Below, piece by piece: positions 28,645 through 58,312 of a stretch of 64,000 bases of DNA. The notes below the pieces were generated by a model. The model saw only the letters and a program-made list of their open reading frames with translations, was not told the origin of the DNA and ran no database searches. How positions within the stretch are numbered: position 1 is the stretch's first letter; every line of letters starts with the position of its first letter. Both the position numbers and the translations under genes were made by a program. Source of the stretch: Octopus sinensis (lineage: Eukaryota); assembly GCF_006345805.1 (NCBI RefSeq), contig NC_042997.1, forward strand, positions 97,030,001 through 97,094,000, read 5' to 3'.

Positions 28645-29782
28645 CTACAAAAATAAATAAGTGATAAATAAATAATAGTATAAATATGATATAATAATTT
28701 TACTGAAAGATATTCACGCATACTTTGAAAATTTGCATTTATTTTCATAAAAGAACAAAGTATCTATTCCTCCAAAGATAATAATAACTTCAAAAATAGA
28801 AAAGCAGGTGGTTTTAAAAGAAGGCTTAGAAGCTGAAATACTATTAACAACTGAAAGCAATAAATACACACTTTCATGATAAATGGAATAATAAATTGAT
28901 TCTTCTTTTCTACGGGAAAACTTAATTACATTTCGCTATTCGGTGCATTACAATCTTTGAGAAATACTTTTATGATATTTAATTACGACTTTTTTCTGTT
29001 TCCCCGGTTCAAATACTGCTGAGATCAACTTCTCTTTTAATTTCTCCGACCACTTAACTGCTGTAGTCAAATGAAATCCTCCATCGAATACCATACTTTA
29101 TTGTCAGTAAAGCAGCGTGCTTTTGTTAGAAATTAATTTGTTTATTGTTCTAAAAAGACAATGAATTGTCGGCGTCGGTAAAACGTCGAATGTTCATTTT
29201 AGTGTCAATCCTCTACGTCGCATGTTTGAATTTTGCCTCATTCAACTTTGTCGTTCATCTTACTGAGTTTGATAGAACAAAATACTTGTAAAGTACTGGA
29301 GTCGATTTAATTAAACAGCCCCCGCTCCAAAATATTGCTGGTCTTACGCGTAAAACGGTATTTAATTAAATAACACAAGGGATTTTTACTCGTCACTCTA
29401 CCGATTACAATTTCTAACGCTTTTTTACGATATGTACAAGGCTTGAAATTTTGTGGGGAGATGTTAGCTGATTACATCACGACCCCAGTACTCGACTATT
29501 ATTATTAAATCGATATATGAACTATTAGCATTATTATTAATAAATCGATATATGAACTTCGAATGCAAGGTCAAACTGAAGTGTTTGACCCGAACAAAAA
29601 AACATAGTGTAATAGGTGTACAACAACATGTAGTAAACGAATATGAAAAAAAATGCGCGCTCAGGAACGGGGGATGGGGGAGAGGACTCGGAAAATTTAC
29701 ATCATCACCATGACCTTTAAACTCCAGTATTTGACCCGAGCAACAAAAAAAGTTTTAAATAGTGTAAGGTCGACTTGGCCTT

Positions 29783-31436
29783 GGTGAACTGGGCACCAAC
29801 AGTGCCGGCAGCGTCGAGGCAGCCCGATGCTGCTGTCTCTTAAGGTAACCATACCGTGAGGGCGGGCGACCCCGGTACTACCTTGTTGTGGTGAGAAAGT
29901 TTACACCCTTTGAGAGAAGAGCAGTTAGTGATGGCATGTCCAACTCGCGCAGGTCCCTCTCGTACGAGAGTAGCCAAAGGTACCGAACCCCCACCCCCCG
30001 GCTGCCGTGAAACCGGAGCCCCGAGATGTTGTTGGGTCATCTCGAGTCGTGCGATAGCCCACCCCGGAGAATCGGCCACGATCGGGGCACCCGTCGGGTA
30101 CAAGCCGACCAACTAGGCGCCGGCCCGTAACTGGTTGCCGTGGGTCCGCACCGGCGTCGAACCCGGGATAGTACGGTTACCTGGCGACACAGATGGCACC
30201 TCCCCACCCAAGTATACCGGGCGTTTAGGTAAGGTCGTAATCGTAGCCTCTGTTGGTGCAGATCAGTGTGGAGACATACTCCCTGGACGGGTGGTTCGTC
30301 CACGAAAGCCGGACGTCCCGCAATTGTATGTAGACTCTCACTTCACCTGTGGTGGACGGGTGTTAATGTGTAGTCATGTGTTGAAAGCCCCATCAGAAAC
30401 GCGACTTATAGGGTCCCTTCCTTTCGATCACACCAATTATAGCCGCACCCGGGGATGGTTAGATGGATCCGACATGCGCACAGCCACCGACCACCATAAA
30501 ACACTGGGTGATTAGGTGCGGTTATGATACGTGCATCGAGGGGTTTGCAGCCGATCCCGTAGGCGAATGTATTCACCCTTTGGACGCATGATTCCGTCCA
30601 CAAAAGCCGAGGCCCCACTTGACCTCCGCTCAGTCGCCGAAGGCCTACGAAAAATAGGCGGTGGTGCTGCCCACTATAATATACCAGAGCATCCCGATGA
30701 GCGCCAAGTTTCGGATTGAGTGGCTCCGTCCACTATAAAACACCGGGGTGTTGGGGCAGATGACCCTTCTGCTCCGGTCACGCCCTTCATGTCGCACTAG
30801 TTGGGAAGCTCTTTCCTTTGACGGGTGGCACCGCCCACCTTAATACACCGGCACCCCAGGGTCCCCTCCGCCCATTACTGGCCTGCACGGGCGTTAGGAT
30901 TCGGTGCTGGAGAGAGCCACGGTCACCAAAAGTAGGGGCCCTGATGTGCGGCCAATTTTTCCCGGGTCTGCCGTTGGGGTTCCCTACTGCCTCGAAAGCG
31001 ACCTGCACACAGGAGAGGTCAAGCGTCGGAGAGCACCAAGCTCGATCGACCCCTCCTTGTGAGTCCCCCGCTGACACTAGGTTGCAGAGGCGATCATGCA
31101 TCTTAGCCCGCACGTTAGTTGGGCGGCCTGCCAGTAGGCGATGGCGTATCTCTCAAGGCGCGACGGCACCGTCCACGGTTAAAAAAACGGGACCGGCTTC
31201 GACTTATTCGTGTGCGCGTTAGACTCGGCTCTGGTGTATTGCGACATCACCACCCGATGGACAAGGTGCACGTGTAACTATTTGACGTTATGCATCGGGA
31301 AATAACCCACGTTACAAATGGGGATGAGCGCCGCCGCTGTGCCCTGTAGTAGCCGTCTTGGAGACCACAGAGCACCGCTGCGGTACTCTTTCCCTAGAGG
31401 GAAAGAGTGCCTTGCGGTACGTGCAGTTAGCCATAT
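29783..31436 (+). other. Unclassified GC-rich, highly structured, apparently non-coding insertion
   Basis: Hand counts of four sample lines give 45-63% GC against visibly AT-rich flanks. Dense local stems have G-U pairs on the + strand; repeated pseudoknot modules; only short ORFs with no recognisable protein. Confidence 0.75.
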
Positions 31437-31443
31437 GCCTCGT

Positions 31444-32000
31444 CATCTAATTAAGTACATCTAATTAAGTACCAGTGAAACAATGGAAATCGATGTAATT
31501 GACTAAACCCTCGCCAAAAATTTCAGACCTTGTGCCTTTAGTAGAAAGAATAGTTACTGTGTTCGTCCGTCTTAAACGCACTCTGAGTTCAAATTCTGCC
31601 GGGGTTAATTTTGCCTTATTATTGTTAAGGCAACGAGCTCGTAGAATTGGACATTCTGCGTTCAAATGCTGCCGCATTCGACTTTGCCTTTTAACCTTTC
31701 GGCGTCGATAAAACAAGCACCAGTTGACTACTGAGGTTGATTTAATCGACTTATCCCGTCCCCCAAAAGTGCTGGCCTTGCACCAAAATTTGAAAATATT
31801 ATTAATGCGGTGAGCTGGCAGAATCGTTAGCACGCCGGACAAAGTCCTGAGCAGTATTTGTCCATCTTCACGTTCTGAGTTCAAATTTCGCAGACTTTGC
31901 TTTTCATCCTTTCGGGATCATGAAATATGTATCAGTCGGGTACTGGGGTCGTGATGTAATCAGCTAACATCTCCCCACAAAATTTTAAGCCTTGTACCTA
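31444..32000 (+). mobile_element. Cluster of family A SINE pieces (tail at 31444-31550, further copies to about 32000)
   Basis: TAATTAAGTACCAGTG...CCTTGTGCCTTTAGTAGAAAG tail and GAGCTGGCAGAATCGTTAGCACGCCGG heads. Confidence 0.8.
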
Positions 32001-34048
32001 TTGTAAAAAAAGCATCAGAAATTGTAATCGGTAGAGTGACGAGTAAAATTCCTTGTGCTTTTTAATTAAATACCGTTTTGTACTGAGTTCAGATCCTTTT
32101 ATTGTTCGTTCACCTTTCCTCTTTCCGCTACAGCTGTTATCGATATAATCAACCAATTCCCTATGTCTTAATGTGTCAAGGTAAGAAATAAATATTACTC
32201 TGGGGGTGTTACAGAACGAAAAAAAAAGATAGTATACGGGACAACATATCTTATCGTATTTAATGGGGTTTTTTTTCTTTTTGTTCTGAGTTCAAATCCC
32301 TCTGATAAAGACATTTTTTTTATCGTTCTGAGTTTTATGAAAGAAAAACAGTGACGTACTAGAATCTATATAATCATCTATACCTCCAACCAAAATATGA
32401 GAACGTTTATCTATCAATGTTAGAAATTGAAAATTATTGTTGAAAGCAGTAAATGGCAAAACTGATAGAGCGTCAATCAGAAAATGCATTTTACTCCGTT
32501 CTTGTCGAGTGTCAATCAAAAAGAGATAAGAATAATTTAATAACAGTTGAATAATTCTGAAAACTGCAGAACACAAACCATACTTAAGTTGGTAAGTGAA
32601 AAAGTCCTTTAGCATAAATTAGATGGCGATTTACTGACGATGGCGAACATCTATGGTAAACAACTTCGGGTGTGCTTTTGGTCTTTTAAAACCTTAACTT
32701 GGGTATAGTCCATTCACAACCGTCATGCCTTCTCGACGACAAATAGATACAGATTTTTGTGTGAAAATAATTCAGGTATTCCCGTAATTTTATTTTCAGT
32801 AACTGGATTGCTGCCGCGCTGGGGCACTATCAAAAAAGGTTTAGTCGATCGAAGTGATCACAGTCATAACTTTTTATTTTTAGTCTGATAGCTGATCCAT
32901 ACATCACTTTTTGTTGAGCTGTTAAGTTACGGGGGACATAGACACACGCCAGTTGTCGAGTAAGGAGAGACAAACGCAAACACAAATACTTAGATACACA
33001 CACGCAAAGATACAGATACAGACACAAGCACACAAATACAGACATACACACACATACACACACAATCATGGCTGGTTTCTGCACAGTATCCGTCGACCAA
33101 ATTCATTCATAAAAACGGTTTTGTTGTAGATGATACTTCCCCAAGGTGCTACTCTATGGAACGGAACCCGTAATCACATAGATACAAAGATCTTGTTAAC
33201 TACAGCCATACGTGTACCATGCCTCATAAGAGAAATTTAATTAATAATCTTGAAAATTCCATACATTTTATTTTGGTGAGAATGAGCTACACAATCGTCA
33301 TAGAATCCACCTCAATGGAACGTGCCTTGACAAAAGCTAAATGAAAATATTTCCGTTCAAGAATTGAATGAGTTGCACAATGTTACCGTGATATGATGAC
33401 GATTTCTTTCGTAAGCACAGAGCAACTGGTTTTCGTCGAAGAATGAGACAGCGAAAATTTAATGACATTTTGAAAGATAATTAGTTCCATTAATTTGTTA
33501 TTATTTAGCCTCAATTAATTTATCATGGAGTAGAACGCTGAGCATTCCAGCCAAGGCTATCCCGTCATTTATATAGGATTAGTTATATAAGGCTCTATTA
33601 TGTACAGTTCCTTTACGGAAATTAACTGATAGAATCGCTTGCACGACGGACAAAGTGTTTAAGAGTCGATAGTAATCCATCATTTGAATTAGATTCGACC
33701 TCTATTTCTAGCAGATTGAGAGACAACTTAGATGCTACCTTAATGTTGTTGAGTGTGAATAATGGACTTAAGCAATCCAGCTATGACCATTTCATCATTG
33801 TTCAAAGGTACATCATCCATGTCAGCATCATTTTCATTAATCTTTTAAAAAATGATAAAGCATCAGTAATCAACTTAGGGTCCACAAGATAGCACTGGTT
33901 GTCTCTTAGCTGTGTTCAAAATATCAAAAGGCTTTTGTTCAAAATATAGATACAATTATAGTTACATACCTTCCAACTAAGAAATAAAACTGGGAAAATG
34001 AATTTGTTATTACTTTATAAAATCGGCTTGTTGGATATATGGCTTTCA

Positions 34049-34449
34049 CTAAGGCAGTGAGCTGGCAGAATCGTTAGCACGCCGGGCGAAATGCTCAGCG
34101 GTTTTTCGTCTGCCGTTACGTTCCGCCGAGGTCGACTTCGCCTTTCATCCTTTCGGGGTCGATAAATTAAGTACCAGTTACGCACTGGGGTAGATATAAT
34201 CGACTTAATCCGTTTGTCTGTCCTTGTTTGCCCTCGCTGTGTTTAGCCCCTTGTGGGTAGTAAAGAAATAGGTATTTCGTCTGCGGTTACGTTCTGAGTT
34301 CAAATTCCGCCGAGGTCGACTTCGCCTTTCATCCTTTCGGGGTCGATAAAGTACCAGTTACGCACTGGGGTCGATGTAATCGACTTAATCCGTTTGTCTG
34401 TCCTTGTTTGTCCTCTCTATATTTAGCCCCTTGTGGGCAATAAAGAAAT
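34049..34449 (+). mobile_element. Family A SINE with duplicated core and 14-bp TSD
   Basis: ATATATGGCTTTCA at 34035-34048 and 34450-34463; two internal core units. Confidence 0.92.
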
Positions 34450-34904
34450 ATATATGGCTTTCAGAAGCATCGGCTCCGTGGAAAAAATGTTGAGAACCAG
34501 TACAACAGGATACAAATGGAGAGCGGTGTTAACTGATATTTTTAGTAGGTTACATCACAACATAGAGGCTTCAAGATTGTCTTGTAAAGTGAAGTAGTTC
34601 TAACTCATATCATAAGAAAGCTTTCCCTACAAACTTCCATAACATGGTTGTCAATAGAAACATGTGGTTTTGCAACACAGAATTAGAACAAAAGTCTCCG
34701 AAATGCAAGCCTTCAAAAGAATAGAAGATTGTAATAAAATGAGAAAGATAAATGTACGCTATTGACGTTGCTTGATCCCGGGTCTCATTTACATATAAAA
34801 TAAGCAACCTCTATGAAAGTCTATTACAGTTCAGTACCCTCCATCCCAATTCGCTGATGATAATGAAAAGTAAACAAACTCAAAGAAAACCATATATATA
34901 TACT

Positions 34905-58105: not shown

Positions 58106-58312
58106 TAATTTATTTTCGAATGCAGAGACGCCGTTAGAACAGCAAACACATTAGGTAAATTACACTTAATGGTAAAGTACTTGACCGAAGTCTTCAACAG
58201 ATGTGGGTTCGAATCCCATGGCAGCATGTTGACAAATTTTTCCGCTTCGAAAGGGTGATTTACCCAATGTTTCTGCTGTTCTAAAGGCGCTTCTGCGCTC
58301 GAAAGTAAATTA
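58106..58312. mobile_element. Short fold-back element enclosing a tRNA-like segment
   Basis: 55-bp arms 58106-58160 / 58258-58312 with 46 of 55 positions complementary; TGGGTTCGAATCCCA B-box/T-arm at 58204-58218. Confidence 0.7.

What the first reader, a model, noticed from the sequence alone, without database searches (positions are those of the whole stretch)
30660..30856. Three covarying copies of an H-type pseudoknot module, plus two partial copies
Three non-tandem copies share N-GTGG-N6-CCAC-N'-WTAAWAYAC-CRG: GGTGG TGCTGC CCACT ATAATATAC CAG (30660-30687), AGTGG CTCCGT CCACT ATAAAACAC CGGGG (30719-30748), GGTGG CACCGC CCACC TTAATACAC CGG (30824-30851). Stem 1 is NGTGG/CCACN', whose outer pair varies compensatorily (G-U, A-U, G-C). 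Stem 2 pairs the hairpin loop with the downstream bases (CTG/CAG, CTCCG/CGGGG, CCG/CGG) across a conserved 9-nt A-rich loop 3. A fourth copy keeps the loop and stem 2 but not stem 1 (CACCG ACCACCATAAAACAC TGGGTG, 30485-30510); a fifth is degenerate (about 30193-30221). From memory, the architecture resembles the tandem pseudoknots in tobamovirus-type 3' UTRs (TMV ...AGUG-UUUUU-CCCU-C-CACU-UAAAUCGA-AGGG) and other minor-groove-triplex pseudoknots. That suggests repeated translation-enhancer, nuclease-blocking or protein-binding modules (inference). Weaker alternative: the 15-nt loops ending ...TAATATAC resemble CRESS/HUH nick-site loops (NANTATTAC) less one T.
Basis: partly seen in the sequence, partly recalled or inferred. 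Interest (0 to 1): 0.88.

Follow-up and report, generated by a model that had tools for sequence, protein, structure and literature searches.

The report
Pseudoknot-like repeats in GC-rich insert
A short hairpin-plus-A-rich motif really is repeated inside a 1.65-kb GC-rich, non-coding insertion in an AT-rich animal genome, but the copies are diverged duplicates within a decayed tandem repeat, and although they could fold like a known viral pseudoknot, nothing shows that they do.

Summary
The three copies (30660, 30719, 30824) exist as described, all on the + strand, and are not chance. A three-copy 25-mer family reaches 20/25 against a shuffle maximum of 18. The anchored descriptor gives 3 hits against 0.002 expected.

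"Covarying" is overstated. There are two double-sided changes, which is not above shuffles. Stem 1 is absent from copies 4 and 5.

The copies are sub-modules of unit C in a decayed threefold tandem repeat: A 30120-30399, B 30400-30645, C 30641-30890. This repeat lies in a unique 58% GC segment (about 29783-31435) with no coding signal, apparently inserted into a SINE copy.

The only pseudoknot-type Rfam family touched is RF01079, the luteovirid frameshift pseudoknot. It is hit by three modules at 12-19 bits against a threshold of 50, with the same stem/loop partition. There is no slippery site, no ORF, no tRNA-like end and no tobamovirus family hit.

Nearest-neighbour energies give the pseudoknot no advantage over the plain hairpin, and a 13-bp helix between copies 1 and 3 competes. 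Consensus folding of the three units favours the + strand but depends on the alignment. No relatives were found anywhere.

Best reading, at about 0.35: relic strand-specific RNA modules of the inserted element. A DNA-level repeat core and neutral decay remain serious rivals.

The parts
29783..31435 (+). GC-rich (58%), non-coding, single-copy segment ('island') that holds everything below; apparently an insertion
   Evidence: GC is 0.58 against 0.34 for the window, with sharp edges. It is unique in the window. Stops occur at random-expected density in all six frames and there is no Pfam hit. Joining the two flanks restores a continuous match to SINE profile positions 93-199, at 34.4 bits against 24.3 for the right flank alone.
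30120..30399 (+). Tandem unit A of a decayed threefold repeat
   Evidence: The A/B local alignment scores 81; 200 shuffles gave mean 27.6 and maximum 44. A profile of the units finds exactly these three.
30400..30645 (+). Tandem unit B
   Evidence: The B/C local alignment scores 52.
30641..30890 (+). Tandem unit C, which contains the three copies of the finding
   Evidence: The single-sequence fold z-score is -2.6 on the + strand and +0.3 to +0.4 on the - strand.
30660..30687 (+). Module c1: stem 1 at 30660-30664/30671-30675 (outer pair G-U), loop TGCTGC, A-rich tract 30676-30684, CAG at 30685-30687
   Evidence: The hairpin is -5.5 kcal/mol. In the minimum-energy fold its 5' half pairs with c3 instead.
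30719..30748 (+). Module c2: stem 1 AGTGG/CCACT, loop CTCCGT, tract ATAAAACAC, then CGGGG
   Evidence: Stem 1 pair probability is about 0.55 in context. It hits RF01079 at 12.3 bits.
30824..30851 (+). Module c3: stem 1 GGTGG/CCACC, loop CACCGC, tract TTAATACAC, then CGG
   Evidence: The hairpin is -7.4 kcal/mol. It hits RF01079 at 18.6 bits.
30480..30510 (+). Module c4, the positional homologue of c2 in unit B. It keeps the loop letters, CCAC, the A-rich tract and TGGG, but has no stem 1.
30193..30222 (+). Module c5, the positional homologue of c2 in unit A. It is degenerate and has no stem 1.
30285..30312 (+). Positional homologue of c3 in unit A: a different 5-bp stem (GGACG/CGTCC), a 7-nt A-rich tract, then CCGG
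   Evidence: This is helix 6 of the consensus fold.
30582..30612 (+). Positional homologue of c3 in unit B: the same GGACG/CGTCC stem with a different loop, ACAAAAG, then CCGAGG
31151..31193 (+). Marginal sixth copy outside the tandem units. It has the same loop letters and an A-run followed by CGG, but stem 1 is disrupted.
   Evidence: Model R1 gives 7.9 bits (E=8.2) and R2 gives 5.6 bits. It hits RF01079 at 16.4 bits.
29767..29782 (+). Left flank: a 16-nt stretch matching SINE profile positions 93-108 in 15 of 16 letters. It ends in GCCTT.
31436..31556 (+). Right flank: begins GCCTC (a possible target-site duplicate), then resumes the SINE through to its 3' part

Best explanation
**Shown.**
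- The three copies are diverged duplicates of one module of about 30 nt.
- They are the three sub-modules of unit C, the last unit of a decayed threefold tandem repeat of about 250 nt (30120-30890).
- That repeat lies in the middle of a single-copy, GC-rich, non-coding 1.65-kb segment that sits inside a SINE copy.

**Inferred.**
- The module is a strand-specific RNA element inherited from the transcript of whatever was inserted. It is a 5-bp G/C-rich hairpin with a 6-nt loop, followed by a single-stranded 9-nt A-rich tract and CGG.
- With no slippery site and no reading frame, it cannot act as a frameshifter here.
- In a non-coding RNA, repeated modules of this sort would act as a reiterated structural or protein-binding platform.
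- At this locus it is most likely a decaying relic. Units A and B have already lost stem 1.
For: - **The repeat is real, strand-uniform and local**.
- **Nested tandem structure**. Pairwise identity is 60-68% in the two module cores against 39% in the rest of the units.
- **Same register throughout.** Stem 2 pairs in 14 of 15 cells, with one C-G to U-A double change in c1. The outer pair of stem 1 is G-U, A-U or G-C.
- **Orientation.** The G-U pairs and the order hairpin, A-tract, CGG only make sense on the + strand.
- **Closest Rfam family.** For three modules the only pseudoknot-type Rfam hit is RF01079, which is listed among Rfam's pseudoknotted families in PMC3549841. Its partition matches the solved potato leafroll virus pseudoknot. 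[quoted passage not shown]
- **Accessible tracts.** The A-rich tracts are predicted unpaired, mostly with P>0.7.
- **Single-sequence fold.** Unit C folds better than its shuffles on the + strand only (z=-2.6 against +0.3/+0.4).
- **Consensus fold.** On the L-INS-i alignment the three units beat column shuffles on the + strand (z=-3.1, core -4.4) but not on the - strand (-0.6, -1.5).
Against: - Covariation for the two-stem model is not above shuffles.
- Stem 1 is missing from c4 and c5. The positional homologues of c3 use a different stem and lack a matching stem 2.
- Nearest-neighbour energies with a 7-9.6 kcal/mol pseudoknot penalty give the pseudoknot no gain over the hairpin alone, within about 2 kcal/mol.
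- A 13-bp c1:c3 helix (-25 kcal/mol) replaces stem 1 of c1 and c3 in the minimum-energy fold.
- The consensus fold uses the G-run after c2 and c3 in a nested 8-bp helix that excludes stem 2.
- The consensus-fold signal disappears with other aligners (z=-1.2, +0.2, -1.9).
- Units A and B, the 771-nt A-C repeat region and the left part of the island (29770-30119) have ordinary folding energies. The whole island reaches only z=-2.6 on the + strand, from 24 shuffles.
- The Rfam scores are 12-19 bits against a threshold of 50.
- There is no evidence of transcription, and no relative in any collection searched.
Confidence: 0.35

Rival explanations
1. The motif is a DNA-level repeat core. The island is a mobile-element-type non-coding insert, such as a solo LTR or a non-autonomous transposon. 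Its internal tandem repeats carry a reiterated protein-binding site: a G/C-rich quasi-palindrome (GTGG-N6-CCAC, with CCGNCCAC resembling zinc-finger GC/EGR-type sites) abutting a TATA-like box. The pseudoknot potential is incidental.
For: - The island is an insertion with a possible 5-8 bp target duplication inside a SINE.
- It is non-coding.
- Degenerate tandem repeats with better-conserved cores are typical of LTR U3 regions and transposon interiors (general knowledge).
- The half-sites are conserved, with a variable spacer of fixed length.
- A perfect TATAAAA lies in c2.
- What c4 and c5 keep is the sequence core, not the stem.
- Most of the island has ordinary RNA folding energy.
Against: - No significant terminal inverted repeat.
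- TG..CA ends appear only if the edges are shifted by 2-3 nt, and then the flanking duplicate no longer matches.
- No second copy in the 64 kb.
- No polyadenylation signal.
- A DNA site does not explain the + strand-only fold signal or the three hits to one pseudoknot family.
- The resemblance to transcription-factor sites is from memory and untested.
Confidence: 0.3
2. The pattern is a neutral relic. An old short-unit duplication, followed by a 250-nt triplication, is decaying without any constraint. The well-matched 25-30 nt patches and their pairing potential are survivorship plus selection by the reader's eye.
For: - Units are only 43-50% identical overall.
- Covariation is no better than shuffles.
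- Generic pseudoknot descriptors occur 2.6 times per shuffled island.
- The consensus-fold signal depends on the alignment.
- The site is intergenic, repeat-rich DNA.
Against: - Identity is concentrated in two cores (60-68%) against 39% elsewhere.
- c1, c2 and c3 match each other at 20-22 of 28 positions with unalignable spacers between them. Uniform decay would not give this.
- All copies keep the same orientation and the same register.
Confidence: 0.2
3. The island is an endogenous copy of an RNA-virus or subviral non-coding region of tobamovirus type, with a tandem pseudoknot domain.
For: - The pseudoknot-like architecture is present in three modules.
- The GC content is foreign to the host and the segment is inserted.
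Against: - No hit to any tobamovirus pseudoknot or tRNA-like Rfam family at E<=10, and no tRNA-like structure.
- The modules are not contiguous.
- There is no viral protein remnant in six frames.
- No relative turned up in viral, metagenome or prokaryote collections or in protein databases.
- There is no poly(A) at either end.
Confidence: 0.05
4. The segment is a CRESS-DNA/HUH replication origin, or a delta- or viroid-like circular RNA copy. The basis is the TAATATAC-type loops, the 1.65-kb size and the 58% GC.
For: Only the size, the GC content and the near-nonanucleotide letters in c1 and c5.
Against: - No NANTATTAC on either strand, and no Rep or capsid remnant.
- No ribozyme family at E<=10.
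- The fold is branched, not rod-like (median pair span 49 nt), and z is only about -2.6.
- No antigen-like ORF.
Confidence: 0.02

Closest known systems
Luteovirid (polerovirus/enamovirus-type) -1 frameshift-stimulating pseudoknot: Rfam RF01079 'RF_site3'; the solved potato leafroll virus and beet western yellows virus pseudoknots
   Same: - Stem 1 is G/C-rich and 4-5 bp long.
- The hairpin loop is 6 nt, split as a 2-nt loop 1, the 3-nt 5' strand of stem 2 and a 1-nt junction.
- An A-rich loop of about 9 nt follows stem 1, then CGG forms a 3-bp stem 2.
- The loop letters of c3, c4 and the sixth copy coincide with the model.
- It is the best and only pseudoknot-type Rfam match for three modules.
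- The geometry agrees with PMC5416846.
   Different: - Scores are 12-19 bits against a 50-bit threshold.
- There is no slippery heptamer upstream, no overlapping reading frames and no RdRp.
- There are five to six copies in non-coding DNA of an animal genome instead of one copy in a coding overlap.
- Stem 1 contains U-A and G-U pairs rather than G-C only.
- The last bases of the A-rich loop are CAC rather than A.
- Tertiary contacts are untested.
Tobamovirus-type upstream pseudoknot domain (tandem pseudoknots before a tRNA-like 3' end)
   Same: Several small H-type pseudoknot candidates lie on one strand of a non-coding stretch.
   Different: - The candidates are not contiguous or coaxially stacked. 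The spacers are 31 and 75 nt, and the copies in the other units lie hundreds of bases away.
- There is no tRNA-like structure.
- No Rfam hit at E<=10.
- No adjoining viral gene.
preQ1-I riboswitch aptamer (bacterial), an H-type pseudoknot with an A-rich tail in the stem 1 minor groove (resemblance recalled from memory)
   Same: A short hairpin is followed by an A-rich tail, and a 3-4 bp second stem forms between the loop and the 3' end.
   Different: - No preQ1 family hit at E<=10.
- The host is eukaryotic and there is no downstream gene.
- The copies are reiterated.
- The motif scan of one genome per prokaryotic species gave only 6 single chance matches.
Internal tandem repeats of mobile-element non-coding regions (LTR U3 enhancer repeats, transposon-borne satellites) and reiterated RNA elements in retroelement 3' regions
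   Same: - The segment is a non-coding insert with composition foreign to its surroundings.
- It has a possible short target duplication.
- It carries a degenerate tandem repeat whose cores are better kept than the spacers.
   Different: - No terminal repeats, no canonical ends, no second copy in the window and no associated genes.
- Family membership cannot be tested without the host genome.

Membership tests
Luteovirid -1 frameshift pseudoknot (Rfam RF01079) | Covariance-model score at or above the family's gathering score (50 bits) | tested here: not met
   Scores are 18.6, 16.4 and 12.3 bits, with E-values of 1.5-7.
Luteovirid -1 frameshift pseudoknot (Rfam RF01079) | Slippery heptamer X XXY YYZ a few bases upstream of stem 1 | tested here: not met
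   None lies within 19 nt upstream of any of six modules.
Luteovirid -1 frameshift pseudoknot (Rfam RF01079) | Lies in the overlap of two reading frames (protease/VPg and RdRp) | tested here: not met
   Stop-free stretches across the modules are mostly 14-63 codons. The longest frames are 132 and 152 codons and have no homologues. There is no Pfam hit in six frames.
Luteovirid -1 frameshift pseudoknot (Rfam RF01079) | Architecture: stem 1 of 4-5 bp, 6-nt hairpin loop (2+3+1), A-rich loop of 7-9 nt, 3-bp stem 2 | tested here: met
   It is met in c1, c2 and c3. Stem 1 is absent in c4 and c5.
Luteovirid -1 frameshift pseudoknot (Rfam RF01079) | Minor-groove base triples and loop 1 to stem 2 tertiary contact | not testable with these tools
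   This needs probing, melting or a solved structure. Secondary-structure energies alone give no gain over the hairpin.
Tobamovirus-type upstream pseudoknot domain | Match to the Rfam upstream-pseudoknot families | tested here: not met
   There is no such hit at E<=10 on either strand.
Tobamovirus-type upstream pseudoknot domain | Consecutive, abutting pseudoknots directly upstream of a tRNA-like 3' end | tested here: not met
   Start-to-start spacing is 59 and 105 nt with unrelated spacers. ARAGORN finds nothing and there is no tRNA-like Rfam hit in the island.
Tobamovirus-type upstream pseudoknot domain | Adjoining viral coding sequence | tested here: not met
   There is no coding signal or protein homology.
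CRESS-DNA / HUH replication origin | Nonanucleotide NANTATTAC in the loop of a stem-loop | tested here: not met
   It is absent on both strands of the island, as is TATTAC.
CRESS-DNA / HUH replication origin | Rep (HUH endonuclease/helicase) gene or remnant nearby | tested here: not met
   There is no Pfam hit in the ORFs or in six-frame translations with X at stops.
Delta-like or viroid-like circular RNA (cDNA copy) | Rod-like or highly self-complementary fold | tested here: not met
   The minimum-energy fold is branched, with 64% of bases paired and a median pair span of 49 nt. The whole-island z-score is about -2.6, and most segments are near 0.
Delta-like or viroid-like circular RNA (cDNA copy) | Self-cleaving ribozyme | tested here: not met
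   No ribozyme family is hit at E<=10.
Solo LTR or non-autonomous transposon with internal tandem repeats | Target-site duplication at the edges | tested here: inconclusive
   GCCTT and GCCTC flank the insert, or TTGGCCTT and TATGCCTC if read as 8 bp. The joined flanks restore SINE positions 93-199.
Solo LTR or non-autonomous transposon with internal tandem repeats | Terminal inverted repeats or TG..CA ends | tested here: not met
   The best end-to-end inverted alignment is at chance level (P=0.44). TG..CA appears only with edges that spoil the duplication.
Solo LTR or non-autonomous transposon with internal tandem repeats | Other copies in the genome, some with coding parts | not testable with these tools
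   There is no second copy in the window. No eukaryote DNA collection is searchable here.

The most novel reading that the evidence does not exclude
The island is a DNA copy of a so far unknown non-coding RNA, either a subviral or virus-associated RNA of an invertebrate or a host long non-coding RNA. Its core is a tandem array of compact triplex pseudoknots of the luteovirid kind, reused outside any reading frame as a reiterated structural or protein-binding platform.
Probability: 0.08. Interest if true: 0.7.

Novelty: new member of a known kind. Interest (0 to 1): 0.3.

Why it matters
If the modules really fold as luteovirid-type pseudoknots, this would be a first case of that compact triplex fold reiterated in a non-coding context in an animal genome. 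It would also point to an unknown donor RNA. As the evidence stands, it is a well-defined but orphan repeat motif inside an old insertion. Its main value is as a concrete target: a short descriptor plus a 250-nt unit that can be searched for in the host genome and its transcriptomes.

Tried and rejected
**1. Rfam searches.**
- At E<=1 over 4.5 kb there was nothing.
- At gathering thresholds over the whole window there was only a borderline tRNA-like hit at 58164-58219.
- At E<=10 the other hits (two snoRNA families, a viral intronic RNA, a lncRNA fragment) are noise.

**2. Coding origin.**
- Ten ORFs and all six frames with X at stops gave no Pfam family.
- The 134-aa and 126-aa ORFs gave no homologue among 5.8 billion clusters or in viral contigs.
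- The 108-aa minus-strand ORF hit one FG-GAP-type repeat protein at E=3e-6. This is a 19/51 match counted five times over the target's own repeats, so it was rejected as spurious.
- The period-3 test was uninformative, because the control ORF also failed it.

**3. Relatives by DNA.**
- Motif scans gave 3 viral, 4 metagenome and 6 prokaryote-genome loci, each with a single chance match and no other similarity to the island.
- A two-copy pattern found only unrelated phage tandem repeats.
- The second-core pattern gave 0 hits.
- blastn against the plasmid and phage collections found nothing.
- A literature search for the motif letters found only primers.

**4. Rod-like or viroid-like fold:** rejected.

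**5. Terminal inverted repeat, LTR ends, poly(A), telomere-template letters:** none found.

**6. Further tandem units.** A profile search found none left or right of A-C.

**7. Host identity.** A near-identical Penelope-type ORF occurs in a Logan assembly of run SRR9105617, but that accession appears in no paper searched. The mollusc assignment therefore stays unverified.

Full report
**Setting.** The window is AT-rich (34% GC) eukaryotic DNA. It is full of microsatellites, copies of a tRNA-derived SINE and a Penelope-type retroelement.

The finding lies in the only GC-rich stretch, at 58% GC, from about 29783 to 31435, with sharp edges. CpG is not depleted either inside or outside it (observed/expected 0.93 against 0.86-0.94), so it is not a CpG island in a methylated background. 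The stretch is unique in the window.

**The island is non-coding.**
- The longest ORF is 134 aa.
- Stop codons occur 15-28 times per 580 codons in all six frames, which is what 58% GC predicts.
- Ten ORFs and all six frames (X at stops) hit no Pfam family.
- Three ORFs have no credible homologue in the large protein collections.
- No Rfam family reaches E<=1, and there is no tRNA or tRNA-like structure.

**The island is an insertion.**
- The 16 bases left of it match positions 93-108 of a profile of the window's SINE copies in 15 of 16 letters.
- The right flank resumes the SINE.
- Joining the flanks gives one continuous match to positions 93-199, at 34.4 bits against 24.3 for the right flank alone.
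- GCCTT on the left and GCCTC on the right look like a short target duplication.
- I found no significant terminal inverted repeat, no LTR-type ends compatible with that duplication, and no poly(A) tail or signal.
- The class of the insert stays open.

**The observation.** They are not chance:
- No dinucleotide shuffle of the island gives a three-copy 25-mer family better than 18/25, against 20/25 observed.
- The GTGG/CCAC-anchored descriptor gives 3 hits against 0.002 expected.
- A sequence-free descriptor with an A/T-rich third loop gives 3 against 0.34 (P=0.003).
- A fully generic descriptor of the same dimensions gives 6 against 2.6 (P=0.047).

Note, however, that small pseudoknot-shaped matches as such are common in GC-rich sequence.

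A covariance model and a sequence-only model built from the five copies find those five, a marginal sixth at 31162-31193, and nothing else in 64 kb. All are on the + strand.

**What the copies are.** They are not independent.
- Local alignment shows that 30158-30326 and 30444-30621 are homologous over about 170 nt (score 81; shuffles mean 27.6, maximum 44).
- 30487-30632 and 30726-30874 are homologous as well (score 52).
- This defines three head-to-tail units: A 30120-30399, B 30400-30645 and C 30641-30890.
- The units are only 43-50% identical, too diverged for Tandem Repeats Finder.
- Identity is concentrated in two cores (60% and 68%) against 39% elsewhere.
- c1, c2 and c3 are three sub-modules of unit C.
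- c2 corresponds by position to c4 (unit B) and c5 (unit A).
- c3 corresponds by position to 30582-30612 (B) and 30285-30312 (A). These two carry a different 5-bp stem (GGACG/CGTCC), a shorter A-rich tract and then CCG.

So there are two levels of duplication, and 'three copies' samples only the best-kept unit.

**Test of the structure.** On the five copies the two-stem model has 77.5% of cells paired and two double-sided changes. Neither exceeds shuffles.
- Stem 1 holds in c1-c3 and is absent in c4 and c5.
- Stem 2 pairs in 14 of 15 cells at one fixed register, but largely because CCG and CGG are conserved letters.
- The one true compensation is C-G to U-A in c1.

The energetics are as follows:
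- In isolation each of c1-c3 folds into the stem 1 hairpin, at -5.0 to -7.4 kcal/mol.
- Adding a 3-bp stem 2 with a 7-9.6 kcal/mol pseudoknot penalty gives energies within about 2 kcal/mol of the hairpin alone. Any advantage would have to come from tertiary contacts that I cannot compute.
- In context, the 5' half of c1 pairs with c3 in a 13-bp helix (-25 kcal/mol). Only c2 keeps stem 1, with P about 0.55. The A-rich tracts stay single-stranded.

**Is there RNA structure at all?** The evidence is mixed.
- Unit C folds better than its shuffles on the + strand (z=-2.6) and not on the - strand (+0.3 to +0.4).
- Units A and B, the left part of the island (29770-30119) and the A-C repeat region as a whole are ordinary. 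The whole island reaches z=-2.6 on the + strand, from 24 shuffles.
- RNAalifold on the three units gives a multi-hairpin consensus with 17 double-sided changes.
- Because that structure was derived from the same alignment, I tested it against column-shuffled alignments. This gave z=-3.1 on the + strand (core columns -4.4) against -0.6 and -1.5 on the - strand.
- With three other aligners the + strand z is -1.2, +0.2 and -1.9. The signal is therefore suggestive but not robust.
- The consensus uses the G-run after c2 and c3 in an 8-bp nested helix that excludes stem 2.

**Closest known family.** At E<=10 the only pseudoknot-type Rfam family touched is RF01079, a putative RdRp -1 frameshift site.
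- It is hit by c3 (18.6 bits), by 31151-31190 (16.4 bits) and, in a short search, by c2 (12.3 bits).
- The family is listed among Rfam's pseudoknotted families (PMC3549841).
- That partition matches the solved potato leafroll virus pseudoknot. [quoted passage not shown]

Membership fails, however:
- The scores are far below 50 bits.
- There is no slippery heptamer upstream of any module.
- There are no reading frames.
- The tobamovirus comparison fails on every defining feature that I could test.
- The CRESS alternative fails on the nonanucleotide and on Rep.

**Search for relatives.** None was found.
- Motif scans of the viral, metagenome and prokaryote-genome collections returned only single chance matches.
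- blastn against plasmids and phages found nothing.
- Protein-guided scans found nothing.
- No collection of eukaryotic DNA could be searched, so copy number in the host is unknown.

**Verdict.**
- Firm: a real, strand-uniform module of about 30 nt, reiterated by nested duplication in a decayed threefold tandem repeat inside a non-coding GC-rich insertion.
- Likely but unproven (about 0.35): it is an RNA-level hairpin or pseudoknot module inherited from the inserted element's transcript, and is now decaying.
- Serious rivals: a DNA-level repeat core of a mobile-element-type insert (about 0.3) and neutral decay (about 0.2).
- The tobamovirus-type reading is unlikely (about 0.05).
- The claimed covariation does not carry the weight put on it.

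Noticed in passing
window 29352-29497 and 31934-32079: A 147-nt inverted repeat (92.5% identical) brackets the island plus its flanks. The right arm is the 3' part of a full SINE copy plus about 75 nt beyond it, so this looks like an inverted segmental duplication rather than two independent SINE insertions. No clear target duplication lies outside the arms.
   Followed up: partly
window 31382-31411: A perfect 14-bp hairpin (GGTACTCTTTCCCT / AGGGAAAGAGTGCC, 2-nt gap) lies about 25 nt before the right edge of the island. It explains the low fold energy of 31181-31465 on both strands.
   Followed up: partly
window 31444-31471: An exact 14-nt tandem duplication (CATCTAATTAAGTA twice) lies in the SINE flank just right of the island.
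   Followed up: no
window 30983-31282: This is the only 300-nt stretch of the island with a period-3 composition signal above all 200 shuffles. It overlaps the longest stop-free frame (30764-31219, 152 codons). The ORF there has no homologue, and the control ORF failed the same test, so the meaning is unclear.
   Followed up: partly
window 17138-18908: A Penelope-type retroelement remnant with RT-like and GIY-YIG-type parts. Its homologues carry PF26215 and PF01541. Its reading frame is split over three ORFs, meaning two breaks. A 99% identical product occurs in a Logan assembly of run SRR9105617.
   Followed up: partly
window 2875-8075: About 5.2 kb of (TA)n-rich microsatellite, with GC down to 5%.
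   Followed up: no
window 14358-14768 and 34121-34450: SINE-derived sequence is amplified as tandem arrays, with periods of 145 and 180 nt at 90-92% match.
   Followed up: no
window 29655-29693: A 39-nt GC-rich patch (TGCGCGCTCAGGAACGGGGGATGGGGGAGAGGACTCGG) lies about 90 nt left of the island, separated from it by SINE-like sequence. Whether it once belonged to the island is unknown.
   Followed up: no
window 58164-58219: A borderline tRNA family hit (29.7 bits against a threshold of 29) that ARAGORN does not call. It is probably the tRNA-derived head of a SINE.
   Followed up: no
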